DNA of 64,000 bases from Macrostomum lignano (GCA_002269645.1 NIVC01003354.1:38634-102633); one strand, 5' to 3'. Counted from the stretch's first letter, positions 4,850 to 56,655 are shown. Translations and numbers: made by a program. The notes: generated from the sequence alone by a model not told the origin.

Positions 4850-5795
4850 GAGTTTTTAATTGCATCCAAACTTTCTGACTAATGCCTTCGTGTGTTCCAA
4901 AGAAGGAGACACTGATTCATGGGGTGTGTACATTGACAAATGCAGTTGCAAGTTGCGTGCAAGTTTGTTGACAAAAAGCAGAGCGGAACAAAGATTGTCT
5001 ACGTGATTGACACTTCGGGCCAGGCGGGCTGTGTCAACGTTACTCGAATTCGCCGAGGCGGCGTTGGAATAAGTGATCCAAAAGCCGGTTTGCATCGCCA
5101 ACTATTCGTCTTTTATGGGCGGCGTAGATCGCCTGGACAGTGGACTCCAGCCGTACCATCCGAACAGGAAGACGCAGAAAGGTTTCAGAAGCTCGGTTTT
5201 CACATCATCCTCCTTCTAGTTCGCAATGCTTGGATCGTTTATCAGAATGCTGGAGGAACAAAGAGCTTCCTCAGCTTCCTGGAAGTTGCGATCAAGAATT
5301 TGATTGAACAATCTGGGCCAGGCAGACGTTGCGTTTCGGTTCGGGTCGGTCGAGCACCCGCCGCAGCCGGGCACATTCCAAGCAAGTCGGGCCAGGTTGT
5401 TGGGCAAAATCGACCGAGGCGTCGATGCCGACAGTGTCAAAAGAAGACAGTGTACGTCTGCTCGCAGTGTCCTGGCGTCCCACCATACTGTGTCTTGTGA
5501 ACTGCTTTGGCACGTGGCACAATAATTAAAGAACCATTATCATCTTCTAAGGTGTTGGAAAGCTTTGAATGCTTTTGAAATTTGAATAAAACTTTCCCGC
5601 TATGTTTGCTGGTTTGTTACTGTTGTTACTGTTAATACGAGCCATCTTTGAAAGGTTTGTTTGCTTTACTTCTATTATTGGTCGAGTTCGACCCATAGCC
5701 GACTGGAACGGTGGGAAGATCGAGAATTTGTGCGCTGGCCATAGATAGTTGTAAGTGGTCAAAAACGACCTTCCCGACTTCTTAAGGTTTTAACC
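4850..5795 (+). mobile_element. piggyBac-family transposon remnant (3' part of transposase, frameshifted, probable right end)
   Basis: Contains VACKFVDKK..IVYVIDT and IANYSSFMGGVDRLD (piggyBac YN..MGGVD motif, ~5095-5140, different frame). Followed by FQKLGFHIILLLVRNAWIVY and a C-terminal Cys-rich domain RRRCRQCQKKTVYVCSQCPGVPPYC..NCFGTWH. The likely terminus ggtcaaaaacgacc...cttaaggttTTAA is at ~5757-5793. No matching left end found. Confidence 0.85.
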
Positions 5796-6382: not shown

Positions 6383-7829
6383 ACCTCTACGAATCGGTAA
6401 ATTCTATAGGCCTAGTCCGAAAAGCCACGAATTGTATCCTGCGTATTCATGTACATGATGTAGTACATCTAGGTCTTTGTTCCAAGCGTAGGAGTTGCTA
6501 GTACCTAATGTATATAGCTCGCAGACTTACACTGTGTACAAGTACATGTACCTTATCGATTATAGGCAGTCTATGTAGCGCAATCTCAATTTCAATGTTT
6601 TTTTCAGACAGGTTTTTCTTTCGAAGAAATTTCTCGAACCCGATCAACGCGAGTCTTAGTATTTGCTAAGGATTTCGACTTTTGACGACTGTACAAGCCG
6701 TTTTATTTTCTCTACTTTTTGTGTACTACATCTATAATTCGTGATAAGAATCTTCCAGATTTCGCAGCTGGCCGCCATGAAAGTTTCAACGTCTGAGGTC
6801 CAGGATTGGCAATCCCGACCACTGATCGACAGACATCTTTGCATTCATACATTGCATTGCATTACATTGTAATATTATCACCGTTGACGATTCTTTGCAA
6901 TTGCAAATTGATCATGATTGTTTAATTACATGTATATTTCTACATATTCTAGCTCTTTATTACTTCAGGAATCTCATGCAGCTTATAAAAATATAGTTTA
7001 AAAAAGCCTCGGTTATTCCAGACTCGGTGCCGGGCAGGAATGATTTTGAACGGGAATGAATTCCGTGCCCGCTATAGCTTCTTCTATATATACATGTACA
7101 TGCAAATAGTTTATGCCTTGGCTCCCTCAAAATGCTGTCAACACAGCTTTCAGTGGGGGGGGGGTAGTGCCGTGACCTGGGCTGCATGAAAAACACCTAT
7201 GCAACCCTCGTGGTGCTCTCTCGTGGTGCATATCCTACACGGGACTTGTTGAATTCGGCTCATACTCGGTGATCTTCCACTCTGTTCTTCAGCTTCTATT
7301 CTATGTCCTGCGACAGGCACTCTCACTACTAACAATTAATACCAGGACTCATGGTAAAATAACCAAACAGACAGAAGGAACAAAGAGTTGAATGGCTAAT
7401 GCCCACCATTTTTCCTGCTGCTAAACAAAGTAATTTATTTCGTAATATAATTTTTGTGCTAGTGAGTTATTTTAATTGCTTGGCAATGCAACAGTTCCTA
7501 GTTTTTAGGCTATGCATTTCTTTTTATAAGTGCAAAGGATTTGAAGATGGAAACATCAGAAAGTAGGCGCATTATTTTCAAGACACACTAGGGCAACGTA
7601 CTGGTATGATATAAGAAATATTGGAAAATAATTTATAGTCCAATATCAAACTACTTTACTTTTATCGATAACTCGTAGCATTGAGCATTAGTTTACTAAT
7701 TAGTATATTGTAAAGAGGAAATGCAAAGCAGTAAACAGTGTGAACATTTGATGGAAATCCGTCTGGCCAGCCGCTCCAGTGACCGAGAGCCGCTGCTTGT
7801 TTATGGCTGTAAAGCCCGGTTTCATTTCC

Positions 7830-8505
7830 CTACACTCCCCACGTTTCTGGAAATCCCCTAAACTCCCCACGTTTCTGGAAAGCCCCTACACTCGCCACGT
7901 TTCTGGAAATCCCCTAAACTCCCCACGTTTCTGGAAATCCCCTACACTCGCCACGTTTCTGGAAATCCCCTACACTCCCCACGTTTCTGGAAAGCCCCTA
8001 CACTCCCCACGTTTCTGGAAAGCCCCTACACTCGCCACGTTTCTGGAAATCCCCTACACTCCCCACGTTTCTGGAAATCCCCTACACTCCCCACGTTTCT
8101 GGAAATCCGCTACACTCCCCACGTTTCTGGAAATCCGCTACACTCCCCACGTTTCTGGAAAGCCCCTACACTCCCCACGTTTCTGGAAATCCGCTACACT
8201 CCCCACGTTTCTGGAAATCCCCTACACTCCCCACGTTTCTGGAAAGCCCCTACACTCGCCACGTTTCTGGAAATCCCCTACACTCCCCACGTTTCTGGAA
8301 AGCCCCTACACTCCCCACGTTTCTGGAAAGCCCCTACACTCGCCACGTTTCTGGAAATCCCCTACACTCCCCACGTTTCTGGAAAGCCCCTACACTCCCC
8401 ACGTTTCTGGAAAGCCCCTACACTCGCCACGTTTCTGGAAATCCCCTACACTCCCCACGTTTCTGGAATCCCCTACACTCCCCACGTTTCTGGAAATCCT
8501 CTACC
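7830..8505. repeat. Minisatellite, 28 bp (ccacgtttctggaaatcccctacactcc)
   Basis: About 24 near-identical copies. Confidence 0.97.
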
Positions 8506-8663
8506 CTTCCCGTGCATTCATGGAGTTAATTATACAAGCGGATTATTTGGAAGCGGAAAGGCAAAACACTAAAACAATATAAACAGTATTGAAAACATGA
8601 TCTTAAACGTATGCTACTTGTTCCTCGAAACCATAACGAATTCAATATTTTCTCTCTCTTCTA

Positions 8664-13200: not shown

Positions 13201-15384
13201 ATGCATGTAATTAAGCCACCTAATGTCCTTGAACCATGAATGCATTCTGTTCAGCACGCACATGTACATGTCAGCATGACTATACGGCTATTACTTAATA
13301 GTTGTTCACGTGTCAACGCGCATGGCCAGGCCGGGCATCAAGAAAAAGTGCCTCATTGAACACTTGGGTATCGTGAAGCTTTTCATTATTAACCAGTTTA
13401 ATCCCGTACTGACCGTAGGACCTACTCGTAATGTTACTCCTTGCTTTGACTAGCTAGTGATTATTTGCTGAACCGTACATGTATTATTCTACAAAAAGGA
13501 TGGAACCATGCAGGAAACTAAGTTAGCTGAAGACCTGCAAAATTAACAATAATGGTTTGACCGTCCTAAATTTCATTCAATCTCAGCTGAGGATTAAATC
13601 TTCGGCTAGGGGAAATTCGAAAATCTAAAGTGAATGAGATTTTCAAGCTTTTTGAGCAAGGTTACTGTGTAGAAATCAGACAGGCCTTTTTGGGTGCTAT
13701 TGACTTGGGAATTAGGGTAGAATAGTAATAAGGAGCGGGGCAATTTTTCCCATTATTCCTAGATCAAGCTGCTCACGAGAGATTAGGAAAATAATGTATT
13801 TCATATTTCAAATGCGGCTTAGGGCATGCCGATTATGTCTGGGCAAGCCAAACACAAGAGAAAATGAATTTCTACCACATGCAAAAGCAGAGGGCCGAAG
13901 CTTATAGCGCTGTTTCGTGACTCAAGTGCGCCGTTTGCTGATGACATCGATAGCCATAGCTTTTATCCAGATTGAATTTGCAGGGAATTTGCCGGTGAAG
14001 GCCGGATCCGATTGCCATTTCTTATTAGTGTAGTTTGGAGAGAAGTGTTGAGTTGCTATAAAATGGCAATGGCAAATCGGGTATTAGATGTCACGACCTA
14101 AAAGCAGGCATTCTTACACTTACATAGCTACTCATGTCTAATTGATGCCTTAGTTCTAATTGATTAGAAACTGAGACCTGCTCAATTAGTCTGATGCTTC
14201 CATGCAATGCAATTAGGCCGTACACCGTACATCCAGCTCGCATGGCTTATAGCAATTTCAACATTGAGTTTGTCGAAACTCGTGTTGCATTTCATTTTTG
14301 CATCGCGTCTATATTGCAAAACATATACTACACTTCAACCGAAAAATAACACCGCTAAAAGGCATTCCTTGTTTCGTCTATCATTTTTGCTTCAAACGGG
14401 AAAGGTCAATGAGTACGGGCCGACTTTAATTTCAAGGGCATGTCTGCTCTAAAAGCAAAATCACTCACAACAAAAGCAGAATGACGTGTGCTACGACAAA
14501 ACCCTGTTTAGCATTGTACAAAAAAGCAAATCCTTACACAAAATTCGTTTTGAAAACACAACTGTATAATTGAAAGTTGGAGTTCTTCAATAATATACCA
14601 TTGCAATCTCGATTCTGGCAAAAGTGACTTCAATCGTGGCAAACTCATACATAAAATATAAACCATCCGGCAAATATGCCTGTGTCACCTGTGAGGCACT
14701 ATTGTGAGTCAGCGCGGGGTCCATAGCTCAGCAGGAGTTCGTACTATTACCGGTTCTCTTTATGTCGAGGTCTTTTGTCACTAAAACTAAAGTCACTTTT
14801 GACAAAGTTGAATGCATCACGGTTGAACTGATTCTGCTGCACGATTGGCCACAAGGTTAATGTTTTGTGTATGGGCGAGGCACAATTGATGTCACTTTTA
14901 TTGAAATGGTATACTTTCGCAAAATTTGATCTCCAGAAACTTGATAATCAACCTTGCACGAAACGCATGCCAGGGCATTTTGCAGCAAAAATCGGGGAAG
15001 GCCTCCAGCGAAATTTTTACGATTTGCGAATGCAACGTCCTGCTTTTAGTTGTCCTTGAGCAGAATCCGGACAGCTCCGCGTAGTCAGCCAGCAGGCAGT
15101 CAACGAAATGCCTCGAGTGCACACCCGAGTGCTGTCTGGTAGGGAGGCCTGCTGCCTGAGCAAGCAGCTCGATCTTGAGCAGTATGACTCGGCGCGGATT
15201 ATGCATTTTTCAAAGCTGTTTGGGGCCCGTAGACGACAAAGTATATTGAAGGTAAATGACTAGAACACATTGAAAATCATTTTAGTGGAACTTGTACGTT
15301 CCCTAGAAAGGCTCAATTCAGGGGTTGGCAAAGTTTTTTTACATCAAGGGCCAAATAGAGAACCTAGCGCATGACTGCGGGCCA

Positions 15385-15890
15385 GAGGAAGTGAGGAGGA
15401 GAAGGAATAGAGAAGAGAAATAAGAGAAAGGAGAGAGCGGAGAAGGAGAAGGGAGGAGAGGAGAAGAGAGGAGAGGAGAGGAGAGGAGAAGAGAGGAGAG
15501 GAGAGGAGAAGAGAAGAGAGGAGAGGAGAGGAGAGGAGAGGAGAGGAGAGGAGAGGAGAGGAGAGGAGAGGAGAATAGAGGAGAGGAGAGGAGAGGAGAA
15601 TAGAGGAGAGGAGAGGAGAGGAGAGGAGAGGAGAGGAGAGGAGAGGAGAGGAGAGGAGAGGAGAGGAGAGGAGAGGAGAGGAAAGAAGATGAGAGGCGAG
15701 TAGAGGAGAGGAGAGGAGAGGAGAGGAAGAGGAGAGGAGAGGAGAGGAGTGGAGAGGAGAGGAGATGAGAGAGGAGAGGAGAGGAGAGGAGAGGAGAGGA
15801 GAGGAGAGGAGAGGAGAGGAGAGGAGAGGAGAGGAGAGGAGTGGAGAGGAGGTGATAAGAGAGAGCTGAAAGAAAGAGAGATGAGAAGAG
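15385..15890. repeat. (GAGAG)n purine microsatellite
   Basis: Direct inspection. Confidence 0.98.
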
Positions 15891-15909
15891 ACAAACCTTA
15901 ATTACAATT

Positions 15910-16530
15910 GTCGCCGGGCGGGAAAGCGCTGGGTCCGGACGAGGTGCCCATCGAGGTATTGCGCATCCGCTGTGTGGCCAGTGAGGTCGCCAGAGAGTAG
16001 TGAACCGGCTGCGTGCTCATCGGCGAGGAGGCGCCCAACGAATGCACCACGGAATACATCGCAGCTAATTCCTCAGAAGCCGCGCACCATAACCTTGAGG
16101 AGTATCAGGGCATCTGTCTTCGGTCGTGGAGTAGTGGCGCAAATTCTGGCTTTTCGCTGAGGCATTGAAGAGGCGCGGATGCTCTAGCAGCTCCTGATTG
16201 TTATCTTGGGAATTCGCAGGCATACAGATTTACAGATTCGTAGATTATGTATTCGTCGGTGGATAAAAATGTAGGCTCACGCTCCCAATGGTGGTACCAA
16301 ATCAGCTGGTTTCCGCCATCATGGCGATGTACTGTGACATGAAACTGCGTGTCAACACCGGACGGCCCATCGAGACCGTTCTGCTTGACAGTAAACTCGC
16401 TCGAATAGCCAAATCAAGCTGGTCTACAACTCGTCGACTTCAAGATCGGCGACAAACGAATTCCAACATGGCACTGTATCAGCGTCCAAGTGACCTGTTG
16501 TGCCATCGGCGACTCCAACTGGTTTTAGGC
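15910..16530 (+). mobile_element. Decayed, internally deleted RTE-clade retrotransposon fragment nested in the hAT element
   Basis: SPGGKALGPDEVPIEVLRIR (KAxGPD pre-RT motif), VPNQLVSAIMAMYCDMKLRVNTG and NMALYQRPSDLLCHRRLQL (RTE C-terminal motif), interrupted by stops and frameshifts. Confidence 0.75.
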
Positions 16531-17006
16531 TTCTGTCAATGGTCTTTACTTCTGTCAACTAACTAATCCTTGCCACTATCCCCAGCTCCATCAACAGTAT
16601 TCAGGGCCTCGCGACTATGGCAATTTAATAATTATTTAAACACAAGAACTGACACAGCATTTTTTTTTGATTTAAGTTACTGATCTCTGGTTCAATTTTC
16701 TCAATTTACTTCAATTTATTATTTAGTTCAAGTGCATCGATAGCAGAATCAAAGCAAGTAAGTGGTTAGCTTTTACATTCAGGACTGATTAGCAGTTTAC
16801 AACAGATGTATTCATGCAACAGCAGACACTAGGATTGAAGTAAAAGGCGAGAAGATGCTTAGATGAAGGTGCGATCAATATAGAGTTTTCTGTTGTGTTG
16901 AGATTATAGGAATAACTAGTGGATTTGAGGAAGCGGAATAACTTTTCAACATGCATATGTCTTTCACGTTTCAGTTTCTGGCTTTCAGAATTCAGTAACC
17001 ATGATG

Positions 17007-17324
17007 TTAGTGGTGATGGTCGTCATGATGGTGGTGATCGTCGTCATGATGGTGGTGATGGTCGTCATGATGGTGGTGATGGTCGTCATGATGGTGATGA
17101 TGGTCGTCATGGCGGTGATGGCCGTCATGGTGGTGCAGGTGATGGTCGTCATGGTGATGGCTGTCATGGTCGTGATGATGGTCGTCGTGGTGGCGATGGT
17201 CCTGGCTTTGGCCGTTATTGGCTAGGTCGAAGAGCATCTTGCCAGTACTGATGGCGTCGGCTTTGGTTAGCAGGGCAGCGGCGCTCATCAGGACGACTGC
17301 CAGAAGTGCGAAATACGAGCCCAT
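17007..17324 (-). CDS. Secreted histidine/aspartate-rich peptide (105 aa; signal peptide plus poly-His/Asp tail), putative metal-binding protein
   Basis: MGSYFALLAVVLMSAAALLTKADA is a hydrophobic signal peptide with an A-D-A cleavage site. The last 64 residues contain 40 His and 19 Asp in DDHHHHH-type units with mixed CAT/CAC codons. Intronless CDS. Confidence 0.72.
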   Translation of the reverse strand: MGSYFALLAVVLMSAAALLTKADAISTGKMLFDLANNGQSQDHRHHDDHHHDHDSHHHDDHHLHHHDGHHRHDDHHHHHDDHHHHHDDHHHHHDDDHHHHDDHHH

Positions 17325-19267
17325 TGCTTGCGGGTGGTGCCAGTGATACCGTGGTACCCTCGTATCTATCAGATTCGGAAATTAGCTCAAATGCTGCTGC
17401 AGCTCTCACTTAAACTGCTGCGCTCGAGACTCAGCCCATCGAACCGGTCTGCACAGTCAGTTTTGTCTGTGTAAACAACCCTGGTGTTAATGCTGCAATA
17501 CGTCCATGGCAGCATTGGGAACGAAACTGTCTTCTTAAACAGATATTTATTTTATTGTCAATGCATTTCAGCGCAGAATTTAATAGAGGTTTTGCTGTAG
17601 GCTGACTGTAGTTAAATGTACTTTTTTAGATCAAAAGACTTTAAGAAGCAGCACACAGAACTGATGTCCCCGATTGCTTAGTTGTATACGTGGGCATGCA
17701 AAACAATTGGACAACAACAACACATGATTTTGTTCATGAATTCGTACGCACCGCGCCCGTCAGACAGTGGCTATTTATGAACAGCTGTGTGTTTTTTGTA
17801 GACGTCTTACATATGATATGTCGCACTTTGACAGTAAAAGCTATAGTGCAGTACATGTAAATGGGCGGATATACTCGTAAGTGGGCCGGATTGCCATTGT
17901 GAAGTTTCAAAGGACCCGAGGGCCGGATAGAGAGGCTTCGCGGGTCGCGTGTGGCCCACAGGCCGGAGTTTGCGGACCCTTGGCTAAATTGATGGCTTTA
18001 ATTTTTACAGTGAATAATACAAACATATTTTTTGGCTAGGACTACGCGTGAGTGGTGACCTTAGCTTTACTCGTAGCTTCTGTGACCATCTAATGTCAAG
18101 GAAATCAGCCCTAGGCAGCTGCTATTCGTCGATTATTTACTTTGCATCGAAACTAGCGACTCACCCGTTCCATGCGCTACATGTAATACCAACGGGATTG
18201 AATAGACAAATGTACTATTACGCCATCGACTTCCAGACTCTCAGCCTGTCCCGGATCTCGCGGTACTCCGCTAACTAATAAATAAAAAGCGAGCTGACGG
18301 CCACGCATTGCCGCGTTGGTCATGCTGTTTTGAGCCCATTAGGCACTCGCCATAGTGGAGTAGTGGAGTATCTCACACACCACAGCCTCTCTGGCCGCGA
18401 AGCCAGCCGTCCCTGGGGGACTGCGATTATCAAATTCCGCTCGTTTTCTTGCTGCTCCGTTGCTGCCGCTCCCGTCTGTAGCTACTGGCTGGTACATGCG
18501 ATTATTCGCTTAGAGAATCAAGCGGAGATCGAGTAGCTGCATCAATGCCGGCAGGTGATCCCCTTGGGGATTTTTGTCGAATCGACGCTGTAATTTCTAG
18601 GGGAAAACGAACCTTGTTTAAGCGTGTGCTGAGTAACAAAGTAAGCCTGCCGAACTACATTTTGTTTTTTGTTGCAATTCTAAGATGTCAACAACCCAAG
18701 TCGAGAGATGGCAAATCAAGACAGAGGAAATTCAAAACACAGGACAACAAATTCAAACTGATATTTTGTTTTATTTTTCTACAGATCATTTTAATTCATC
18801 CCAGAATATTCAGACACATAAACATAAATGATACTCATCATGAAATTCCCACCGAGAAAAGGACGGAGAAATATTCGCGAGTTGCAGAAAACGTACAGAT
18901 ACAAATATCGCAACCCTAAAATAGTATACATAAACAAAATTAAATGAAACAATGCTTTACCGTTTTAGCAGACTCTGAAATTTTAGTTTTCATCACTTAA
19001 GATTGGCAAGATAATTTTCTGCACACACAACGGCTGTCACTAAAAGGGTCTTTTCTTGTCACCGAAACAACTGCAAGCAATCCCTTCGCAGACAGCGGAG
19101 AGGTAAGCAACTTTGATACGTACGCAGGCAAACGCTCATGCAGGGTGCACATCGGCCCTGAAGTTCTTCATCGCTATGGGATGTACATGTACATACACAC
19201 TAATCTTAAAGGATTGACTCTTGTGGGCAAAAATTTAACGGCTACGGCTCCCCCGCAGCAGTCCCGG

Positions 19268-19915
19268 CATGCATGGAGATGGCACCGCGGCTTCTGATCC
19301 TGTCCCCATCATGCATGGAGATGGCACCGCGGCTTCTGATCCTGTCCCCATCATGCATGGAGATGGCACCACAGCTTCTGATCCTGTCCCCATCATGCAT
19401 GGAGATGGCACCGCGGCTTCTGATCCTGTCCCCATCATGCATGGAGATGGCACCGCGGCTTCTGATCCTGTCCCCATCATGCATGGAGATGGCACCGCGG
19501 CTTCTGATCCTGTCCCCATCATGCATGGAGATGGCACCACAGCTTCTGATCCTGTCCCCATCATGCATGGAGATGGCACCACAGCTTCTGATCCTGTCCC
19601 CATCATGCATGGAGATGGCACCGCGGCTTCTGATCCTGTCCCCATCATGCATGGAGATGGCACCGCGGCTTCTGATCCTGTCCCCATCATGCATGGAGAT
19701 GGCACCGCGGCTTCTGATCCTGTCCCCATCATGCATGGAGATGGCACCGCGGCTTCTGATCCTGTCCCCATCATGCATGGAGATGGCACCGCGGCTTCTG
19801 ATCCTGTCCCCATCATGCATGGAGATGGCACCGCGGCTTCTGATCCTGTCCCCATCATGCATGGAGATGGCACCGCAGCTTCTGATCCTGTCCCCATCAT
19901 GCATGGAGATGGCAT
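19268..19915. repeat. Minisatellite, 42 bp (atgcatggagatggcaccgcggcttctgatcctgtccccatc)
   Basis: About 15 near-perfect copies. Explains four overlapping repeat ORFs. Confidence 0.98.
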
Positions 19916-21777: not shown

Positions 21778-22038
21778 GTGCAACCGACAGCTCAGCCGCA
21801 GCCATTGCGCGGCGCATCTGAAGGCTGCGTACGGCTGTTCAGTCCAAGGACTGGGGGGTCGCCACACACCCTCAATTACCCCAGCTAATGCTGGCACCCA
21901 TTTTACAGCTGGGTAAACTGAAGCAATGCAGAGTTAAGTGTCTTGCTCAAGGACACAAATTGCTCCAGTGGGATTCGGGAATCGAACCCATGACCTTCAA
22001 GTCGTGAGTCCGACGCTCTGACCACTGGGCTACAACCC
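21778..22038 (-). mobile_element. tRNA-derived CORE-like SINE, copy 2 (most complete head)
   Basis: The minus strand reads ggggttgTAGCCCAGTGGtcagagcgtcggactcacgacttgaaggtcatgGGTTCGATTCCcg (Pol III A and B boxes). It is followed by gtgtccttgagcaagacacttaactctgcattgcttcagtttacccagctgtaaaatggg (CORE-like). Confidence 0.9.
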
Positions 22039-22422
22039 CCCTCAAAACGGAATACAGGGACGACCCGCAACCGTTCCCATCCTTTCTTGCGTACTATCGA
22101 ATATAGCTATAACTGCGAAGACAAATCCAATTTACTAATCCAGAGTGATAAGAACTTTGAAAAACCTTCAGAGAAAGATTTAAAATAAAAGGAAGAAATG
22201 GAGACAAAGAGGACACAAAAAGTACACAGACTGGGTGGAGACGGCAATTGCAATTCAAACAGGCTTCAGTCGATATCCAGTCAGCTATCCAGAACAGTAA
22301 AAATAAATATTTCAGTTAGGATACGTCGCAGGGAAAAGCAGCTTATCAGAGCTGGAGCCCGGCTGAAGCTGGGGATGCTGGGGCTCGAAGTTCGTGGAGA
22401 CAAGGGGCTGGCGGCTGGCTGA

Positions 22423-24719: not shown

Positions 24720-24814
24720 CTGAGGGTAAATGGGGTTGAGAATGTCTTTGTTTCCTGTTTGCCTGCCAGAGAAGAAAGGAGAACGGGTAGATTCAACCGT
24801 GATAAAGGGAAAGT

Positions 24815-25830
24815 CAACCGGGAATGAGGGGAGAATCAACCGGGAAAGAGGGGAGAATCTACCGGAAAGGGGGAAAGTCAACCGGGAATGAGGGGAGAAT
24901 CAACCGGGAAAGAGGGGAGAATCAACCGGGAATGAGAGGAGAATCAACCGGGAAAGAGGGGAGAATCAACCGGGAAAGAGGGGAGAATCAACCGGGAAAG
25001 AGGGGAGAATCAACCGGGAATGAGAGGAGAATCAACCGGGAAAGAGGGGAGAATCAACCGGGAAAGAGGGGAGAATCAACCGGGAAAGAGGGGAGAATCA
25101 ACCGGGAATGAGGGGAGAATCAACCGGGAATGAGGGGAGAATCAACCGGGAATGAGGGGAGAATCAACCGGGAAAGAGGGGAGAATCAACCGGGAATGAG
25201 GGGAGAATCAACCGGGAATGAGGGGAGAATCAACCGGGAATGAGGGGAGAATCAACCGGGAAAGAGGGGAGAATCAACCGGGAATGAGAGGAGAATCAAC
25301 CGGGAAAGAGGGGAGAATCAACCGGGAAAGAGGGGAGAATCAACCGGGAATGAGGGGAGAATCAACCGGGAATGAGAGGAGAATCAACCGGGAAAGAGGG
25401 GAGAATCAACCGGGAATGAGGGGAGAATCAACCGGGAATGAGGGGAGAATCAACCGGGAATGAGGGGAGAATCAACCGGGAATGAGGGGAGAATCAACCG
25501 GGAATGAGGGGAGAATCAACCGGGAATGAGGGGAGAATCAACCGGGAATGAGGGGAGAATCAACCGGGAATGAGGGGAGAATCAACCGGGAATGAGGGGA
25601 GAATCAACCGGGAATGAGGGGAGAATCAACCGGGAATGAGGGGAGAATCAACCGGGAATGAGGGGAGAATCAACCGGGAATGAGGGGAGAATCAACCGGG
25701 AAAGAGGGGAGAATCCACCGGGAATGAGAGGAGAATCAACCGGGAATGAGGGGAGAATCAACCGGGAAAGAGGGGAGAATCCACCGGGAATGAGGGGAGA
25801 ATCAACCGGGAATGAGGGGAGAATCAACCA
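24815..25830. repeat. Intronic minisatellite, 22 bp (gggaatgaggggagaatcaacc)
   Basis: About 45 copies; NCS intron 1. Confidence 0.97.
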
Positions 25831-28547: not shown

Positions 28548-29919
28548 TGAGTGAGTGGTGTGATCCGACCTTTCTAACCGCGGGGCAAAATGTGGATTTT
28601 AAGGAACCGGGCTCAGGGCACAAATGAGGTTCCGCATTCATTCCTTTCTGCTTCTTCCCTTCCTTCCCTCTCCCTCACCGACTCAGCAATTCACAGCAAA
28701 GTCGCTCTCAGATGCATTAGCATACTTATCCCCGGCGCCCTCGCCCTCTTCAGCCGTTATCCGTCGCTGACTCACTCGCTTCCACTTCAGTCTCGCCCCA
28801 CTCCCATTCTCTCAGGCCGCATCCCATGCGCCCAAATCTCCCCTTCTTCCTCCTCCTCCGCCCCCCTGTTGCAAGTTGATTAATCCCAATAGGCTGGGTC
28901 TCCCGTTTCGAAAGCAGCTCCTCTTTAAGGTAACGTAAAAGATGATGTAGAAAAAACAGCAATTTGTTAATTAGGAGGCAAGGAACCGGCCTGTTGCTCC
29001 CGGCTACCAGAGGGAAGCCCCCACTCTCTGCCTCAGTCTTTGCCTGTCTCTGTCTGCCTCTCAGTCGGGTGGGTCTTCGGGAAACACAACAGGCGAACTA
29101 CTCGAGAATCGATGTAGAAAAATCGGCTCATCATCGAACTAAGCAAAACATCGTCTCGTAGCGGCTTAGCGGCCATATTTAACACTGTAGCAAGAGCGAG
29201 CCCCTGGGTGAAAATTCTTCTTTGACACCTACCCACTATGAGCCCCCCCCCCCTACGCTTAATCCTTCAAAATCGATGCTTCGCTACCCCCCCCCCCAGG
29301 CAGACACTACCGGGCTGTAGGGCATTGATTTTGGGCCGACGACAGACACGCTTGATTGAGGGGAGAAGCAGCCCGGCTCGGGGTAGCAACGGCGGAGAAC
29401 GACAAATTCGGCGACAAAAAAGAGAAGAACACGAATGACAGGAGGTGTGCAGTCTTTAAATAGGCGCGAGTCCACCCCGTTTCTAAAATTTTCCTCATAT
29501 TGCGACTCTTTGGCCCGAGAATTTCCCAACGGGAAACCGAAGAGCGAGCGCGGACGGGGAGACTTTAGTCCACCAGCAGCAGCAGCAGCAGCAGTGCCTC
29601 TTCCTCGTGTGCCTAAAGGGTGGGGATTTCCTGTGTTTCTTCCCAATCCTTGAGAACTACTCAGACCCCGACAGGGATCGGGGGGGGGGAGGGGCTGCTT
29701 CCTGAGGCTTTTCAGTCCGGAGAGGAAGTTAAAAAAAGCTGAAATAGACTGGCTGGGCCCGGGCTAATTCTGTCACTTGAATAGCTTGTGGGATTGAAGT
29801 ATAAACAATTGAAGCTTAGGTCTGCGATTCAGATGCGTGCTCTGAGGAGAGATGGGAGAGACGGGATGGGAAGATTATAGTAGCCAGGTAGAGGCAGAGG
29901 TAGAGACAGTAGGGAAGAG

Positions 29920-30890
29920 ACATGTGAGAAGAGACAGTTGAGAAGAGACAGGTGAGAAGAGACAGGTGAGAAGAGACAGTTGAGAAGAGAGATTGGGAAG
30001 AGACAGGTGAGAAGAGACAGTTGAGAAGAGACAGGTGAGAAGAGACAGTTGAGAAGAGAGATTGGGAAGAGACAGGTGAGAAGAGACAGTTGAGAAGAGA
30101 CAGGTGAGAAGAGACAGGTGAGAAGAGACAGGTGAGAAGAGACAGTTGAGAAGAGACAGTGAGAAGAGACAGGTGAGAAGATACAGGTGACAAGTGACAA
30201 GTGAGAAGAGACAGTTGAGAAGAGACAAGTGAGAAAAAACAAGTGACAAGTGACAAGTGACAAGTGAGAAGAGACAGGTGAGAAGAGACAGGTGAGAAGA
30301 GACAGGTGACAAGTGACAAGTGAGAAGAGACAGTTGAGAAGAGACAAGTGAGAAAAAACAAGTGACAAGTGACAAGTGACAAGTGAGAAGAGACAGGTGA
30401 GAAGAGACAGGTAAGAAGAAACAGGTGAGAAGAGACCGTTTGAGAAGAGACAGTTGAGAAGAGACAAGTGAGAAGAGACAGGTGAGAAGAAACAAGTGAC
30501 AAGTGACAAGTGAGAAGAGACAGGTGAGAAGAGACAGGTGAGAAGAGACATGTGAGAAGAGAGAGGAGAGAAGAGACAGGTTTGAAAAGAGAGATGAGAA
30601 GAGACAGGTGAGAAAAGAGAGATGAGAAGAGACAGGTGAGAAAAGAGAGATGAGAAGAGACAGGTGAGAAGAGACAGGTGAGAAGAGACAGGTGAGAAGA
30701 GACAGGTGAGAAGAGACAGGTGAGAAGAGACAGGTGAGAAGAGACAGGTGAGAAGAGACAGGTGAGAAGAGACAGTGAGAAGAGACAGGTGAGAAGAGAC
30801 AGGTGAGAAGAGACAGTGAGAAGAGACAGGTGAGAAGAGACACGCGAGAAGAGCCGGGAGCAGAAACAGGTGAGATTAGGCAAGTAAGAA
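29920..30890. repeat. Purine-rich minisatellite, 14 bp (gagaagagacaggt) with (gacaagt)n sub-runs
   Basis: Direct inspection. Source of three long Leu/Ser repeat ORFs. Confidence 0.96.
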
Positions 30891-32753: not shown

Positions 32754-33827
32754 GACAATACAAATTCCGACCACAAAGTTCTGGAAAAAACTCTAAAAGA
32801 CATATTCGAGAGTACTAAAATGATTAGACTATCATTTTTGCAAGCGAGATAGTAAAGACGGATACATGAGCCGTCCTGGTAGTAGCGGAAAGGTTATTTG
32901 GGAGGATATTAGGGATGCGGCCGCGCCTCTCTACGCTGAGTCCGGCATAAATATTTCAGGCGGCTTTTCTCTCCCACTTCTCTCCGCATCCTTCTCCCCT
33001 GAGCCTCCAGAGCCCTGGGTCCGATGCTCCCCCCCCCCCCCCCCCGGATCGGCCTGGCAGCTGGGCTCGCCATCTGCGGGCTGAAGCTGGGAGACGCACA
33101 GGGAGGGGAGAACACGCCGTTGGGATCAATGGCCGGTCTGCCGCGGCCGTGGATGCGCCACAAAACATCGCGCACGGGAACGTAGAGGAGGGGAACTGCC
33201 GGCTAGGAAGAGGAAGAGCTCTAGGAAGAGTGGGTAAAAGACTTGGAACGGATGGGAATCTGGGGATGGGAGGCTGCGGAAGTGCTGAACGCAAGCTAGG
33301 TGTGTCTGGAGCTCGTCTTCCTGCAATTCCTCATCCCTTTATCCTTTCTGCAGCGCCACACATCCCATGTCCCTATCTGCGGCTCACCCTAGCCAGCCGC
33401 CTGCTCAGCCCTCCAGTTATACGGCAGTTTTTTCCGCATCAATACGGAGCTACATGTACTAGAAGATAGCTTTGACTTTCTTTATACTATCAGTAGCAAT
33501 TACCGCATTTTTTCAGTTTAGCCAGCTACGCACAAAACAATGACAGGCAGTCCCCAGCGGGAAGAGCTCGGATTCACTTGCTGGCCCTGGTGGAGAAGGA
33601 GGCTGGGCGGCGGTGCAGCTGGATGCGCATGAATAATTACGGATCCCTTTCGAGTCTGGCCCGGCCCAGTTGAGGTAAATCAGATTAGTCCCATGTTCGC
33701 TGGCGGGTTGGCAGCCTTATGGAAACTATTTATACACGTAGAGACGGGGGCGAAGATAGAAAGTCGAAATAAATGAAGAAGGTTGGAAAGCCGGCACATG
33801 TAGCGGATTTGTGGAGGGCTGCACGAG

Positions 33828-36800
33828 CAATTCAACTCCAACTAGGACACCTGGATTGTTGCAATTAGACCCCAATTGGGACACCTGGATTGTTGCAATT
33901 AGACCCCAATTGGGACACCTGGATTGTTGCAATTCAACTCCAATTGGGACATCTGGATTGTTGCAATTAGACCCCAATTGGGACACCTGGATTGTTGCAA
34001 TTAGACCCCAATTGGGGCACCTGGATTGCTGCAATTCAACTCCAACTAGGACACCTGGATTGTTGCAATTCAACCCCCATTGGGACACCTGGATTGTTGC
34101 AATTCAACTCCAACTAGGACACCTGGATTGTTGCAATTCAACCCCCATTGGGACACCTGGATTGTTGCAATTCAACTCCAATTAAGACACCTGGATTGTT
34201 GCAATTCAACTCCAATTAAGACACGTGGATTGTTGCAATTCAACTCCAATTAAGACTCGTGGATTGTTGCATTTCAACTCCAATTAAGACACGTGGATTG
34301 TTGCAATTCAACTCGAATTAAGACACCTGGATTGTTGCAATTCAACTCGAATTAAGACACCTGGATTGTTGCAATTCAACTCCAATTAAGACACGTGGAT
34401 TGTTGCAATTCAACTCCAAATAAGACTCCTGGATTGTTGCAATTCAACTCCAATTAAGACACCTGGATTGTTGCAATTCAACTCCAATTAAGACACGTGG
34501 ATTGTTGCATTTCAACTCCAATTAAGACACCTGGATTGTTGCATTTCAACTCCAATTAAGACACCTGGATTGTTGCAATTCAACTCCAATTAAGACACCT
34601 GGATTGTTGCAATTCAACTCCAAATAAGACACCTGGATTGTTGCAATTCAACTCCAATTAAGACACCTGGATTGTTGCAATTCAACTCCAATTAAGACAC
34701 GTGGATTGTTGCAATTCAACTCCAAAAAGGACACCTGGATTGTTGCATTTCAACTCTAATTAAGACACGTGGATTGTTGCAATTCAACTCCAATTAAGAC
34801 ACCTGGATTGTTGCAATTCAACTCTAATTAAGACACCTGGATTGTTGCAATTCAACTCCAATTAAGACACGTGGATTGTTGCAATTCAACTCCAAATAAG
34901 ACACCTGGATTGTTGCATTTCAACTCCAATTAAGACACGTGGATTGTTGCAATTCAACTCCAAATAAGACACGTGGATTGTTGCATTTCAACTCCAATTA
35001 AGACACCTGGATTGTTGCAATTCAACTCCAATTAAGACACCTGGATTGTTGCAATTCAACTTCAAATAAGACACCTGGATTGTTGCATTTCAACTCCAAA
35101 TAAGACACGTGGATTGTTGCAATTCAACTCCAATAAAGACACCTGGATTGTCGCAATTCAACTCCAATTAAGACACCTGTATTGTTGCAATTCAACTCCA
35201 ATTAAGACACCTGGATTGTTGCATTTCAACTCGAATTAAGACACGTGGATTGTTGCAATTCAACTCCAATAAAGACACCTGGATTGTTGCAATTCAACTC
35301 GAATTAAGACACGTGGATTGTTGCAATTCAACTCCAATTAAGACACCTGGATTGTTGCATTTCAACTCCAATTAAGACACGTGGATTGTTGCATTTCAAC
35401 TTCAATTAAGACACGTGGATTGTTGCAATTCAACTCCAATTAAGACACCTGGATTGTTGCAATTCAACTCCAATTAAGACACCTGGATTGTTGCAATTCA
35501 ACTCCAATTAAGACACGTGGATTGTTGCAATTCAACTCCAATTAAGACTCGTGGATTGTTGCATTTCAACTCCAATTAAGACACCTGGATTGTTGCAATT
35601 CAACTCCAATTAAGACACCTGGATTGTTGCAATTCAACTCGAATTAAGACACCTGGATTGTTGCAATTCAACTCCAATTAAGACACCTGGATTGTTGCAA
35701 TTCAACTCCAAATAAGACTCCTGGATTGTTGCAATTCAACTCCAATTAAGACACCTGGATTGTTGCAATTCAACTCCAATTAAGACACGTGGATTGTTGC
35801 ATTTCAACTTCAATTAAGACACGTGGATTGTTGCAATTCAACTCCAATTAAGACACGTGGATTGTTGCAATTCAACTCCAATTAAGACACGTGGATTGTT
35901 GCATTTCAACTTCAATTAAGACACCTGGATTGTTGCAATTCAACTTCAATTAAGACACGTGGATTGTTGCAATTCAACTCCAATTAAGACACGTGGATTG
36001 TTGCAATTCAACTCCAATTAAGACACGTGGATTGTTGCATTTCAACTCCAATTAAGACACGTGGATTGTTGCAATTCAACTCCAAATAAGACACCTGGAT
36101 TGTTGCAATTCAACTCCAATTAAGACACCTGGATTGTTGCAATTCAACTCCAATTAAGACACCTGGATTGTTGCATTTCAACTTCAATTAAGACACGTGG
36201 ATTGTTGCAATTCAACTCCAATTAAGACACGTGGATTGTTGCAATTCAACTCCAAAAAGGACACCTGGATTGTTGCATTTCAACTCCAATTAAGACACGT
36301 GGATTGTTGCAATTCAACTCCAATTAAGACACCTGGATTGTTGCAATTCAACTCTAATTAAGACACCTGGATTGTTGCATTTCAACTCCAATTAAGACAC
36401 GTGGATTGTTGCAATTCAACTCCAAATAAGACACCTGGATTGTTGCATTTCAACTCCAATTAAGACACGTGGATTGTTGCAATTCAACTCCAATTAAGAC
36501 ACGTGGATTGTTGCATTTCAACTCCAATTAAGACACCTGGATTGTTGCAATTCAACTCCAATTAAGACACCTGGATTGTTGCAATTCAACTTCAAATAAG
36601 ACACCTGGATTGTTGCATTTCAACTCCAAATAAGACACGTGGATTGTTGCAATTCAACTCCAATAAAGACACCTGGATTGTTGCAATTCAACTCCAATTA
36701 AGACACCTGGATTGTTGCAATTCAACTCCAATTAAGACACCTGGATTGTTGCATTTCAACTCGAATTAAGACACGTGGATTGTTGCAATTCAACTCCAAT

Positions 36801-39800
36801 AAAGACACCTGGATTGTTGCAATTCAACTCCAATTAAGACACCTGGATTGTTGCATTTCAACTCGAATTAAGACACGTGGATTGTTGCATTTCAACTTCA
36901 ATTAAGACACGTGGATTGTTGCAATTCAACTCCAATTAAGACACCTGGATTGTTGCAATTCAACTCCAATTAAGACACCTGGATTGTTGCAATTCAACTC
37001 CAATTAAGACACGTGGATTGTTGCAATTCAACTCCAATTAAGACTCGTGGATTGTTGCATTTCAACTCCAATTAAGACACCTGGATTGTTGCAATTCAAC
37101 TCGAATTAAGACACCTGGATTGTTGCAATTCAACTCGAATTAAGACACCTGGATTGTTGCAATTCAACTCCAATTAAGACACCTGGATTGTTGCAATTCA
37201 ACTCCAATAAGACTCCTGGATTGTTGCAATTCAACTCCAATTAAGACACCTGGATTGTTGCAATTCAACTCCAATTAAGACACGTGGATTGTTGCATTTC
37301 AACTCAATTAAGACACGTGGATTGTTGCAATTCAACTCCAATTAAGACACCTGGATTGTTGCAATTCAACTCCAATTAAGACACGTGGATTGTTGCATTT
37401 CAACTTCAATTAAGACACCTGGATTGTTGCAATTCAACTTCAATTAAGACACGTGGATTGTTGCAATTCAACTCCAATTAAGACACCTGGATTGTTGCAA
37501 TTCAACTCCAATTAAGACACGTGGATTGTTGCATTTCAACTCCAATTAAGACACGTGGATTGTTGCAATTCAACTCCAAATAAGACACCTGGATTGTTGC
37601 AATTTAACTCCAATTAAGACACCTGGATAGTTGCAATTCAACTCCAATTAAGACACGTGGATTGTTGCATTTCAACTTCAATTAAGACACGTGGATTGTT
37701 GCAATTCAACTCCAATTAAGACACGTGGATTGTTGCAATTCAACTCCAAAAAGGACACCTGGATTGTTGCATTTCAACTCCAATTAAGACACCTGGATTG
37801 TTGCAATTCAACTCCAATTAAGACACCTGGATTGTTGCAATTCAACTCCAATTAAGACACGTGGATTGTTGCAATTCAACTCCAATTAAGACACGTGGAT
37901 TGTTGCATTTCAACTCCAATTAAGACACGTGGATTGTTGCATTTCAACTCCAATTAAGACACGTGGATTGTTGCATTTCAACTCCAATTAAGACACGTGG
38001 ATTGTTGCAATTCAACTCCAATTAAGACACCTGGATTGTTGCATTTCAACTTCAATTAAGACACGTGGATTGTTGCATTTCAACTTCAATTAAGACACGT
38101 GGATTGTTGCAATTCAACTCCAATTAAGACACCTGGATTGTTGCAATTCAACTCCAATTAAGACACGTGGATTGTTGCATTTCAACTCCAATTAAGACAC
38201 GTGGATTGTTGCAATTCAACTCCAAATAAGACACGTGGATTGTTACAATTCAACTCTAATTAAGACACCTGGATTGTTGCAATTCAACTTCAATTAAGAC
38301 ACGTGGATTGTTGCAATTCAACTCTAATTAAGACACCTGGATTGTTGCATTTCAACTCCAATTAAGACACGTGGATTGTTGCAATTCAACTCCAAATAAG
38401 ACACCTGGATTGTTGCATTTACACTCCAATTAAGACACCTGGATTTTTGCAATTCAACTCCAATTAAGACACCTGGATTGTTGCAATTCAACTCCAATTA
38501 AGACACCTGGATTGTTGCATTTCAACTCCAATTAAGACACGTGGATTGTTGCATTTCAACTCCAATTAAGACACGTGGATTGTTGCATTTCAACTCCAAT
38601 TAAGACACGTGGATTGTTGCAATTCAACTCCAATTAAGACACCTGGATTGTTGCAATTCAACTCTAATTAAGACACCTGGATTGTTGCATTTCAACTCCA
38701 ATTAAGACACGTGGATTGTTGCAATTCAACTCCAAATAAGACACCTGGATTGTTGCATTTCAACTCCAATTAAGACACGTGGATTGTTGCAATTCAACTC
38801 CAAATAAGACACGTGGATTGTTGCATTTCAACTCCAATTAAGACACCTGGATTGTTGCAATTCAACTCCAATTAAGACACCTGGATTGTTGCAATTCAAC
38901 TCAAATAAGACACCTGGATTGTTGCATTTCAACTCCAAAAGACACGTGGATTGTTGCAATTCAACTCCAAAAGACACCTGGATTGTTGCATTTCAACTCC
39001 AATTAAGACACCTGGATTGTTGCAATTCAACTCCAGGACACCTGGATTGTTGCAATTCAACTCCAATTGACACCTGGATTGTTGCAATTCAACTCCAATT
39101 AAGACACCTGGATTGTTGCAATTCAACTCCAATTAAGACACGTGGATTGTTGCAATTCAACTCCAATTAAGACACCTGGATTGTTGCAATTCAACTCCAA
39201 TTAAGACACGTGGATTGTTGCATTTCAACTCCAATTAAGACACCTGGATTGTTGCATTTCAACTCCAATTAAGACACCTGGATTGTTGCAATTCAACTCC
39301 AATTAAGACACCTGGATTGTTGCAATTCAACTCCAATTAAGACACGTGGATTGTTGCAATTCAACTCCAATTAAGACACGTGGATTGTTGCAATTCAACT
39401 CCAATTAAGACACCTGGATTGTTGCAATTCAACTCCAAATAAGACACGTGGATTGTTGCATTTCAACTTCAATTAAGACACGTGGATTGTTGCATTTCAA
39501 CTTCAATTAAGACACGTGGATTGTTGCAATTCAACTCCAATTAAGACACCTGGATTGTTGCAATTCAACTCCAATTAAGACACGTGGATTGTTGCATTTC
39601 AACTCCAATTAAGACACGTGGATTGTTGCAATTCAACTCCAATTAAGACACCTGGATTGTTGCAATTCAACTCCAATTAAGACACCTGGATTGTTGCAAT
39701 TCAACTCCAATTAAGACACGTGGATTGTTGCATTTCAACTCCAATTAAGACACGTGGATTGTTGCAATTCAACTCCAAAAGACACCTGGATTGTTGCATT

Positions 39801-48253: not shown

Positions 48254-48283
48254 CTGCAGAGGTGGCCGGTTGGGACTGTGAGT

Positions 48284-48890
<607 letters not shown>

Positions 48891-50030: not shown

Positions 50031-50253
50031 GAGCGCGTGAAAACTTGTCTTTCGGTGGCATAAAATTTTAAAATTATGAACCGCCCTCAGCTCTGCTTAT
50101 TGATGGACACTGCAAGAAGCATCTTTACATATCGGCTCCACTTCACTGAAAGCCCATCATCATCAGTAAATGAAATTTTGAAGGCTGATTTACACCACAA
50201 TGCCTAGTCGTCCTTTGAATTAAGCAAAAGCCAACTAAACAGCCCGTTCTCAC

Positions 50254-50372: not shown

Positions 50373-50391
50373 CTGAAAGTTTTAACCGGAT

Positions 50392-51701: not shown

Positions 51702-51714
51702 CTGCGGATGGGAA

Positions 51715-52487: not shown

Positions 52488-52544
52488 CTGCGGGAGTTGA
52501 GCATCGGACTCAGAATTTAAATCCATTTCCCTTTTTGTCTCCGT

Positions 52545-56621: not shown

Positions 56622-56655
<34 letters not shown>

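What the first reader, a model, noticed from the sequence alone, without database searches (positions are those of the whole stretch)
15311..17990. hAT transposon enclosing a secreted His-rich peptide gene (candidate animal Pack-TIR)
Seen: imperfect 14-bp TIRs (11/14), a 7/8-identical 8-bp TSD and Charlie-type subterminal GGGCC motifs bracket 2664 bp. The interior holds a (GAGAG)n run, an RTE fragment and an intronless ORF with signal peptide and poly-His/Asp tail, plus several hundred bp of its own 5' and 3' flank. Established: 8-bp TSDs and CAGGGGT ends are hAT hallmarks, and gene capture by TIR elements is common in plants but uncommon in animals. Inference: either the element captured and mobilises a host effector gene, or a short MITE was later colonised by a retrocopy. 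A minus-strand AATAAA at 16715-16720 and an A9 run at 16660-16668 weakly fit the retrocopy model.
Basis: partly seen in the sequence, partly recalled or inferred. Interest (0 to 1): 0.85.

Follow-up and report, generated by a model that had tools for sequence, protein, structure and literature searches.

The report
Old hAT transposon relic around orphan ORF
A decayed cut-and-paste (hAT-type) transposon copy in an invertebrate, probably flatworm, genome does enclose a small open reading frame for a possible secreted histidine-rich peptide, but nothing available here shows that the transposon captured or moves that gene, so it is an ordinary, unproven candidate of a known kind.

Summary
The sequence features are at the stated coordinates. 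There are 11/14 inverted ends (15319-15332 and 17969-17982), a 7/8 8-bp target-site duplication, an (AGGAG)n run, and a 105-codon minus-strand ORF whose His/Asp tail is a 21-bp minisatellite. TIR plus TSD with hAT-type YARNG ends is expected about 0.05 times per 64 kb by chance. The pair is the only reciprocal best partner within 8 kb. Both ends are enriched in GGGCC motifs, and the ends match published hAT TIRs at 12/16 and 14/16. I therefore judge one old non-autonomous hAT insertion probable (about 0.75).

The "RTE fragment" is not confirmed: Pfam and PDB sequence searches found nothing.

The Pack-TIR reading could not be tested. The window holds no second copy of the ends or the cargo and no parental copy. 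The genome is absent from every searchable collection. The peptide has no homologue among 1.84 billion representative proteins.

Gene capture by hAT elements in animals is already documented (370 Pack-TIRs, 208 of them hAT, mostly single-copy and produced without transposition). At best this is a new member of a known kind. Interest is low to moderate.

The parts
15311..15318 (.). Left target-site duplication GCTCAATT
   Evidence: It matches the right copy at 7/8.
15319..15385 (+). Left terminus of the hAT-type element. TIR CAGGGGTTGGCAAA at 15319-15332, with subterminal GGGCC motifs at 15348 and 15379.
   Evidence: It matches the published hAT TIR CAGGGGTCCCCAAACT at 12/16 and the Mar TIR CAGGGGTAGGC at 10/11 by eye. 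GGGCC enrichment p=0.003.
15386..15880 (.). Purine-rich tract with an (AGGAG)n microsatellite (TRF 15429-15851, 84 copies, 89% matches)
15902..16450 (+). It shows only short RT-like motifs across shifting frames with stop codons. Its identity is unconfirmed.
   Evidence: Translations. No Pfam hit, no PDB hit, no other copy in the window.
16660..16720 (-). Possible 3' processing signals of the ORF transcript: AATAAA (16720-16715 on the minus strand) and an A9 run (16668-16660), 47 nt apart
   Evidence: This is pattern only, with no expression data.
17007..17324 (-). Intronless 105-codon ORF (coordinates include the stop). It has a signal-peptide-like N-terminus MGSYFALLAVVLMSAAALLTKADA|IS, a 20-residue linker, then a His/Asp-rich tail.
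   Evidence: GC3 is 0.70 against 0.75 in the nAChR exons. Three of 71 non-repeat ORFs in the window pass the same crude signal-peptide criterion. No homologue was found.
17010..17182 (.). 21-bp minisatellite (8.1 copies, 82% matches) that encodes the His/Asp tail. It is open in several frames on both strands.
17325..17869 (-). Upstream region of the ORF inside the element. It is AT-richer, carries several upstream ATGs, and shows no recognisable promoter.
17870..17982 (+). Right terminus. Two exact GGGCCGGAT subterminal repeats (17883, 17920), GGCCC at 17953, an internal weaker copy of the terminus (17881-17921), and TIR TTTGCGGACCCTTG at 17969-17982.
   Evidence: It matches CAGGGGTCCCCAAACT at 14/16. 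GGGCC enrichment p=0.0003.
17983..17990 (.). Right target-site duplication GCTAAATT

Best explanation
The interval 15319-17982 is one old, now immobile, non-autonomous hAT-type DNA transposon copy. Its termini resemble those of Buster/Charlie-like families, and it inserted once, duplicating an 8-bp target (GCTNAATT).

Only about 67 bp on the left and about 113 bp on the right still look like transposon termini. The 2.5 kb between them encodes no transposase. It is a patchwork of three parts:
- a 0.5-kb (AGGAG)n microsatellite;
- about 0.7 kb of unrecognisable, possibly retroelement-derived, sequence;
- a 1.3-kb segment carrying an intronless 105-codon ORF.

The ORF would give a signal peptide followed by a His/Asp-rich peptide, presumably metal-binding. 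Its tail has grown by expansion of a 21-bp minisatellite, which is typical of this extremely satellite-rich genome.

The ORF is a passenger that lies inside the relic. There is no evidence that it was copied from a host gene or that the element has carried it elsewhere. If it did enter after insertion, the route best supported by the literature is transposition-independent filling of a break inside a short MITE, not mobilisation.

Shown: the anatomy, the TIR/TSD statistics, the motif enrichment, and the absence of copies and homologues. Inferred: single insertion, age, passenger status, route of entry, and peptide function.
For: - The TIR (11/14) plus TSD (7/8) with YARNG ends is unique in the window and absent from 8 simulated windows. 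About 5.75 unconstrained chance configurations occur per simulated window, so I estimate about 0.05 constrained ones.
- The two ends are each other's only partner with TIR >=11/14 and TSD >=7/8 within 8 kb. The next candidates reach only 8/14.
- Both ends are enriched in GGGCC/GGCCC, at p=0.003 and p=0.0003, while the interior is at background.
- GGGCCGGAT is repeated exactly twice, only in the right end.
- The ends match the TIR CAGGGGTCCCCAAACT of lizard hAT-HT2/hAT-N families at 12/16 and 14/16 (table read, PMC3014272). They also resemble the Buster-family MITE Mar, CAG(G/A)GGTAGGC (PMC3517528).
- Non-autonomous hAT copies of 1-2.5 kb are normal.
- No transposase or other Pfam domain is found in any frame.
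- The ORF has a 15-residue hydrophobic core with A-x-A before the predicted cleavage site, and GC3 of 0.70, close to the host exons at 0.75. Only 3 of 71 comparable ORFs look like this.
- The tail is a 21-bp tandem array, in a window with 50 TRF rows.
- No parental or second copy lies within -15 kb/+46 kb.
- Most animal Pack-TIRs are single-copy and arise without transposition (PMC8277862).
Against: - No second copy of either end exists in the window, so family membership cannot be shown.
- The two ends do not align significantly beyond the 14-bp TIR.
- The TSD lacks the central TA (NYYTARRN / nnnTAnnn) reported for CAGGGGT-type hAT families.
- The GGGCC motif and the TIR pattern were chosen after the sequence had been seen, so the p-values are optimistic.
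- The ORF has no homologue anywhere. Sixty per cent of it is a repeat that is open in many frames, so it may not be a gene.
Confidence: 0.5

Rival explanations
1. There is no element. The 11/14 inverted match and the 7/8 flanking match are coincidence. The ORF is an ordinary, lineage-restricted host gene or pseudo-ORF in unique DNA, perhaps with an unrelated transposon fragment (the GGGCCGGAT-containing right end) nearby.
For: - Sixty-eight inverted pairs of at least 12 nt occur in the 2.9-kb region, many of them longer than this one.
- About 5.75 TIR+TSD configurations per 64 kb arise by chance.
- The ends do not align significantly overall.
- No other copy exists in the window.
- The TSD does not fit the family's TA-centred preference.
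Against: - With the hAT-type YARNG constraint the chance expectation drops to about 0.05 per window, with 0 in 8 simulations.
- The left end independently shares the GGGCC enrichment of the right end, p=0.003.
- Both ends match a published hAT TIR at 12-14 of 16 positions.
Confidence: 0.2
2. This is a true, transposition-competent Pack-hAT family. A non-autonomous hAT acquired the peptide gene with its flanks and has spread it to several loci, mobilised in trans by an autonomous hAT.
For: - The complete ORF, with about 0.5 kb upstream and 0.35 kb downstream, lies between the ends.
- Multicopy hAT Pack-TIRs exist in frog and alligator (PMC8277862).
Against: - No second copy of ends or cargo is in the window.
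- Only about 1.4% of animal Pack-TIRs are multicopy.
- The imperfect TIRs and mutated TSD indicate an old, inactive copy.
- No hAT transposase is in the window.
Confidence: 0.07
3. A short MITE of about 200 bp was later split by a retrocopy of an intron-containing peptide gene, together with other insertions (microsatellite, retroelement piece).
For: - The ORF is intronless.
- On the minus strand, AATAAA at 16720-16715 is followed by A9 at 16668-16660.
- A 12/13 direct repeat with one indel, TCAGTTCT(T)GTGT(G), lies at 17664-17652 and 16652-16641, flanking about 1 kb. I read this by eye.
Against: - A9 is short, lies 47 nt beyond the signal, and is separated from the repeat by 7 nt.
- The implied 327-nt 5' UTR contains several upstream ATGs.
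- Eight-mer direct repeats are expected by chance at this scale.
- No parent gene is available.
- A retrocopy does not explain the microsatellite and the 0.7-kb unidentified block.
Confidence: 0.1
4. The ORF is not a gene. A 21-bp minisatellite that happens to be stop-free reads through to a chance ATG with a hydrophobic stretch. This question is independent of whether the element is real.
For: - The repeat is open in at least four frames on both strands.
- Nearly all long ORFs in this window are tandem-repeat read-throughs.
- No homologue exists in 5.8 billion or 1.84 billion proteins. The single borderline hit looks compositional.
- The ORF is not on record as a called gene.
Against: - The N-terminal 40 codons are unique sequence.
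- They have a canonical hydrophobic core plus an AxA site, A at -3 and G at +4 around the ATG, and host-like GC3.
- Only 3 of 71 non-repeat ORFs look similar, and one of those is a real transmembrane exon.
Confidence: 0.3

Closest known systems
Non-autonomous hAT elements with CAGGGGT-type TIRs (Buster/Charlie-like), such as hAT-HT2N/hAT-N4 of Anolis carolinensis (TIR CAGGGGTCCYCAAACT, 0.7-1.5 kb) and the Drosophila MITE Mar (TIR CAG(G/A)GGTAGGC)
   Same: An 8-bp TSD. A TIR of 14-16 bp starting CA(G/A)GGGT, with 12/16 and 14/16 identity to the lizard consensus. No coding capacity for a transposase. A length within the reported range.
   Different: The TSD GCTCAATT/GCTAAATT lacks the central TA of these families. 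No family consensus, copy number or cognate transposase could be obtained. The host is a spiralian, probably a flatworm, not a vertebrate or insect.
Animal Pack-TIRs (Tan et al. 2021, Nat Commun, PMC8277862)
   Same: Two termini of one TIR element flank 100-5000 bp of non-transposon sequence. hAT is the commonest carrier (208 of 370). Most cases are single-copy relics.
   Different: The defining parental copy at >=90% identity elsewhere in the genome has not been found. It is absent from the -15 kb/+46 kb covered by the window, where 57% of published cases have theirs. The cargo here would be a whole small gene with flanks rather than a gene fragment.
Plant Pack-MULEs / transduplicating TIR elements
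   Same: The concept is the same: host sequence carried between TIRs.
   Different: A different superfamily (Mutator, 9-bp TSD), usually multicopy and carrying gene fragments. No evidence of amplification exists here.
Small secreted His-rich metal-binding peptides (for example histatins and bacterial Hpn-like proteins). The comparison rests on my own knowledge only.
   Same: A signal peptide followed by a His-dominated, low-complexity tail with acidic residues.
   Different: No sequence homology was detected. The resemblance is compositional only, and the function is untested.

Membership tests
hAT superfamily (non-autonomous copy) | 8-bp target-site duplication | tested here: met
   GCTCAATT against GCTAAATT, 7/8, directly abutting the TIRs. 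The chance of >=7/8 for a fixed pair is about 4e-4 (my calculation).
hAT superfamily (non-autonomous copy) | Short TIRs beginning YARNG | tested here: met
   CAGGG... and CAAGG..., with 11/14 identity between the arms. They match the published TIR CAGGGGTCCCCAAACT at 12/16 and 14/16.
hAT superfamily (non-autonomous copy) | TSD preference of the Buster/Charlie-like group (nnnTAnnn / NYYTARRN) | tested here: not met
   The central dinucleotide is CA on the left and AA on the right. Four of 6 constrained positions fit NYYTARRN. This is a preference, not an absolute rule.
hAT superfamily (non-autonomous copy) | Both ends belong to one repeat family with other genomic copies, and a cognate hAT transposase exists in the genome | not testable with these tools
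   No other copy is in the window. No Pfam transposase domain is in 13.3-18.3 kb. The genome is absent from the collections.
Pack-TIR (criteria of PMC8277862) | Internal sequence of 100-5000 bp flanked by two pieces of the same TIR element, each covering >=10 bp of the consensus terminus | tested here: inconclusive
   The interior is 2636 bp between 14-bp TIRs. No family consensus exists against which to score the termini. The shared GGGCC enrichment supports a common origin.
Pack-TIR (criteria of PMC8277862) | A unique parental copy of the cargo elsewhere in the genome (>=90% identity, 80-120% length), not itself flanked by TEs | not testable with these tools
   None is found within the 64-kb window. 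The rest of the genome is unavailable.
Pack-TIR (criteria of PMC8277862) | The cargo is not a retrocopy of a multi-exon parent | not testable with these tools
   The ORF is intronless, with weak poly(A)-like signals. No parent is available for comparison.
RTE-clade non-LTR retrotransposon (interior fragment) | Recognisable reverse-transcriptase domain | tested here: not met
   There is no RVT or any other Pfam hit at E<=0.1-1 in any frame. There is no RT among the PDB sequences at E<=10.

The most novel reading that the evidence does not exclude
A multicopy Pack-hAT family in a flatworm-like genome that carries a complete, expressed gene for a secreted His/Asp-rich peptide with its own regulatory flanks, and has spread it to several loci. 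This would be transposon-driven amplification of a whole functional secreted-peptide gene in an animal.
Probability: 0.06. Interest if true: 0.6.

Novelty: new member of a known kind. Interest (0 to 1): 0.25.

Why it matters
If the cargo proved to be a duplicated and mobilised host gene, it would add a rare whole-gene, possibly multicopy, example to the catalogue of animal Pack-TIRs. It would come from a phylum not prominent in that catalogue, and would show a route by which small secreted-peptide families can expand. As it stands, the locus is an ordinary decayed hAT relic with heterogeneous filling. The concept is already published. Its main value is as a worked example that TIR plus TSD alone (about 6 chance configurations per 64 kb here) is not enough to call a Pack-TIR.

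Tried and rejected
1. Other copies in the window. Blastn of 15250-18050 at word size 9 found only self hits and the internal 21-bp repeat. Blastn-short at word size 7 on both ends gave nothing better than E=3.5. A degenerate TIR pattern matched only the two known sites, against 0.83 expected.

2. External copies. A 19-mer from the right end was scanned against JGI metagenome contigs. It gave 10 hits, all GC-rich bacterial coding sequence with no flanking similarity, so they are chance matches.

3. Exact-protein look-ups of the peptide and of two long window ORFs found nothing on record.

4. Homologues of the peptide. None were found in the 5.8-billion word-indexed search. The exhaustive search of 1.84 billion representatives gave one borderline hit (E=6e-4, 38% identity). 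It is a His-rich protein with an unrelated N-terminus, and I judged it compositional.

5. First attempt to identify the organism, with the nAChR C-terminal exon: no hits. A stitched 304-aa nAChR query then gave best hits of 57-60% to Paragonimus, Cichlidogyrus and Spirometra, closely followed by nemertean, annelid and mollusc sequences. The host is therefore a spiralian, probably a flatworm, and the species is not in the database.

6. RT/RTE identity of 15.9-16.5 kb.

7. Rfam and ARAGORN found only an unrelated tRNA-Val.

8. Literature searches for flatworm His-rich secreted peptides and flatworm hAT MITEs found nothing specific.

9. I considered that the right end might be a complete tiny MITE on its own. 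It contains an internal weaker copy of its terminus, but no left-type TIR is nearby, so I rejected this.


Full report
**What is in the sequence**

The stated coordinates are accurate.
- GCTCAATT (15311-15318) precedes CAGGGGTTGGCAAA (15319-15332).
- At the far side, TTTGCGGACCCTTG (17969-17982, reverse complement CAAGGGTCCGCAAA) is followed by GCTAAATT (17983-17990).
- The arms match at 11/14 and the flanking octamers at 7/8.

The order between the ends on the plus strand is as follows.
- About 67 bp of terminal sequence.
- A purine-rich tract with an (AGGAG)n microsatellite (TRF 15429-15851, 84 copies).
- About 0.7 kb of GC-richer sequence (15.9-16.6 kb).
- An AT-rich stretch (32-39% GC, 16.6-17.0 kb).
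- A 105-codon ORF on the minus strand (17007-17324).
- About 0.55 kb of upstream sequence.
- About 113 bp of terminal sequence.

The minus-strand AATAAA (16720-16715) and the A9 run (16668-16660) are present.

**Is the TIR/TSD more than chance?**

As a bare inverted repeat it is not. The 2.9-kb region holds 68 inverted pairs of at least 12 nt, and this pair is not among the 25 longest. Local alignment of the two ends is not significant in the inverted orientation (113 of 500 shuffles reach the score). It is marginal in the direct orientation (AGGGCCrrATAGAGA, 11 of 500).

I then counted every pair of positions up to 5 kb apart with at least 11/14 complementary arms abutted by at least 7/8 matching octamers.
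- The window has 13 such pairs.
- Eight Markov-1 simulations of the window average 5.75. This configuration alone is therefore worthless as evidence.
- Requiring the hAT signature YARNG at both ends leaves exactly one pair in the window, the candidate, and none in 8 simulations.
- From the unconstrained rate I estimate about 0.05 expected per 64 kb.

The pair is also the only reciprocal partner within 8 kb. The next best candidates have 8/14 arms.

Independent support comes from the subterminal motif.
- GGGCC/GGCCC occurs 69 times in 64 kb.
- It occurs twice in the 72-bp left end (p=0.003) and three times in the 113-bp right end (p=0.0003).
- It occurs only twice in the 2.5-kb interior.
- GGGCCGGAT occurs exactly twice in the whole window, 37 bp apart, in the right end.

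These p-values are optimistic, because the motifs were chosen after the sequence had been seen. Together, I rate a single genuine hAT-type insertion at about 0.75.

**Comparison with published hAT termini**

Lizard hAT-HT2, hAT-HT2N1-3, hAT-HT3N2 and hAT-N4 have TIRs CAGGGGTCC(C/Y)CAAACT and 8-bp TSDs. Their TSD patterns include NTCTAGAN, NYYTARRN and NTNTANAN (PMC3014272).
- The left and right arms here match CAGGGGTCCCCAAACT at 12/16 and 14/16.
- Bat and bug Buster2 non-autonomous elements carry CAGGGGTGGCCAACCT (PMC4298943).
- The Drosophila Buster-family MITE Mar has CAG(G/A)GGTAGGC and a TSD consensus of nnnTAnnn (PMC3517528).
- The TSD here has CA/AA at its centre, so it does not fit that preference. 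It fits 4 of the 6 constrained positions of NYYTARRN.
- The same table shows non-autonomous hAT copies of 0.3-2.5 kb, so 2664 bp is unremarkable.

**The interior**

No Pfam family is detected in any of the six frames of 13300-18280, so there is no transposase.

The "RTE fragment" could not be confirmed.
- By eye, one frame reads ...GKALGPDEVPIEVLR... and later ...EYQGICLRS.... Another frame reads ...VPNQLVSAIMAMYCDMKLRVNTG.... These are reminiscent of non-LTR reverse transcriptases.
- I therefore call it unidentified, possibly retroelement-derived, sequence.

**The ORF**

The ORF encodes MGSYFALLAVVLMSAAALLTKADA/ISTGKMLFDLANNGQSQ followed by about 65 residues that are almost only His and Asp.

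Points in favour of a real coding exon:
- The N-terminus has a 15-residue hydrophobic core and Ala at positions -3 and -1 of the likely cleavage site.
- The ATG has A at -3 and G at +4.
- GC3 of the unique first 40 codons is 0.70, against 0.75 in the exons of the neighbouring receptor gene and about 0.4 GC in the flanks.
- Under a crude criterion, only 3 of 71 ATG-ORFs of at least 60 aa outside tandem arrays look signal-peptide-like. One of those is a true transmembrane exon.

Points against:
- The His/Asp tail is a 21-bp minisatellite (17010-17182, 8.1 copies) that is stop-free in at least four frames.
- Almost every long ORF in this window is a tandem-repeat read-through.
- The peptide has no homologue in the 5.8-billion-protein search.
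- The exhaustive search of 1.84 billion representatives gave only one borderline hit, which looks compositional.
- No gene with this product is on record.

I put the probability that it is a real, lineage-restricted gene at roughly 0.6-0.7. "Effector" is speculation.

**Host and context**

A nicotinic-receptor alpha-type gene lies on the minus strand from about 62.3 to 47.4 kb, with satellite-filled introns (Cys-loop exon and YPCCPEPY). A stitched 304-aa query finds its best matches at only 57-60% identity in the flatworms Paragonimus, Cichlidogyrus and Spirometra. Nemertean, annelid and mollusc proteins follow closely.

The source is therefore a spiralian animal, probably a flatworm, whose genome is not in the protein or contig collections. 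This is why the decisive genome-wide copy search could not be done.

A scan of metagenome contigs with a right-end 19-mer returned only bacterial chance matches.

**Pack-TIR or not**

Tan et al. (PMC8277862) report the following.
- They define Pack-TIRs by two termini of one TIR element around 100-5000 bp that has a unique parental copy elsewhere at >=90% identity.
- They found 370 in 100 animal genomes, 208 of them on hAT elements. That is about 2 per 10,000 TIR copies.
- Only about 1.4% are multicopy.
- Most arose by transposition-independent gap filling.
- 57% have the parent within 15 kb.

Here the geometry criterion is met. The parental copy is absent from the -15 kb/+46 kb that the window covers, and the rest of the genome cannot be searched.

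The retrocopy alternative has only weak support.
- The A9 run lies 47 nt past the AATAAA.
- A 12/13 direct repeat lies near the right places.
- However, the implied 5' UTR is 327 nt long and contains several upstream ATGs.

**Verdict**

The physical observation is largely right, and the hAT assignment is reasonable. The claim that matters, capture and mobilisation of a host gene, is untested and a priori unlikely.

The most probable reading is an old, immobile non-autonomous hAT copy with heterogeneous filling that happens to contain an orphan ORF.

The kind of thing proposed is already known in animals, so even the favourable outcome would be a new member of a known kind.

Noticed in passing
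window 33827-43979: A 10.15-kb tandem array of a 34-bp unit (GCAATTCAACTCCAATTAAGACACCTGGATTGTT, about 300 copies, 94% matches). It gives a flat 38% GC plateau in the composition profile.
   Followed up: no
whole window (e.g. 24-1845, 7828-8511, 19268-19914, 24785-25829, 29902-30875, 54929-56091, 62674-64000): An exceptional density of mini- and microsatellites (50 TRF rows at score >=100). Nearly all ORFs of at least 150 aa are read-throughs of these arrays on one or both strands, so ORF length is no evidence of a gene in this genome.
   Followed up: partly
window 47440-62258, minus strand: A nicotinic acetylcholine receptor alpha-type gene (Neur_chan_LBD and Neur_chan_memb, YPCCPEPY loop C). 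It has at least 8 exons separated by satellite-filled introns. The best protein matches are only 57-60%, to flatworm receptors. One intronic 28-bp minisatellite is in frame with the Cys-loop exon, forming a 503-aa pseudo-ORF (54728-56239).
   Followed up: partly
window 21966-22041, minus strand: A tRNA-Val (anticodon CAC) gene about 4 kb from the element (ARAGORN; Rfam 33.1 bits).
   Followed up: no
window 60983-61094 and 48286-48890: A perfect 12-mer array CCCTCACCCTAA x9.3, a variant of the TTAGGG-type telomeric repeat at an interstitial site inside the receptor gene region, and a (CTAA)151 array.
   Followed up: no
window 17881-17921 vs 17918-17982: The right terminus contains an internal, shorter and weaker copy of itself (GTGGGCCGGAT...AGTTTCAAAGGACCCGAG against GAGGGCCGGAT...AGTTTGCGGACCCTTG). 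This is either a subterminal repeat or a partial terminal duplication.
   Followed up: partly
window 50625-50655, minus strand: GCTAAATTCAG..TTGTTTTTTTACGTC resembles the right TSD octamer followed by the start of the left end (E=9.5 in blastn-short). It is probably chance.
   Followed up: no
window 4940-5500, plus strand: A 186-aa ORF ending in a Cys-rich motif (CRQCQKKTVYVCSQCPGVPPYC). By eye it recalls the C-terminal zinc-finger of piggyBac-type transposases, but it has no Pfam hit.
   Followed up: partly
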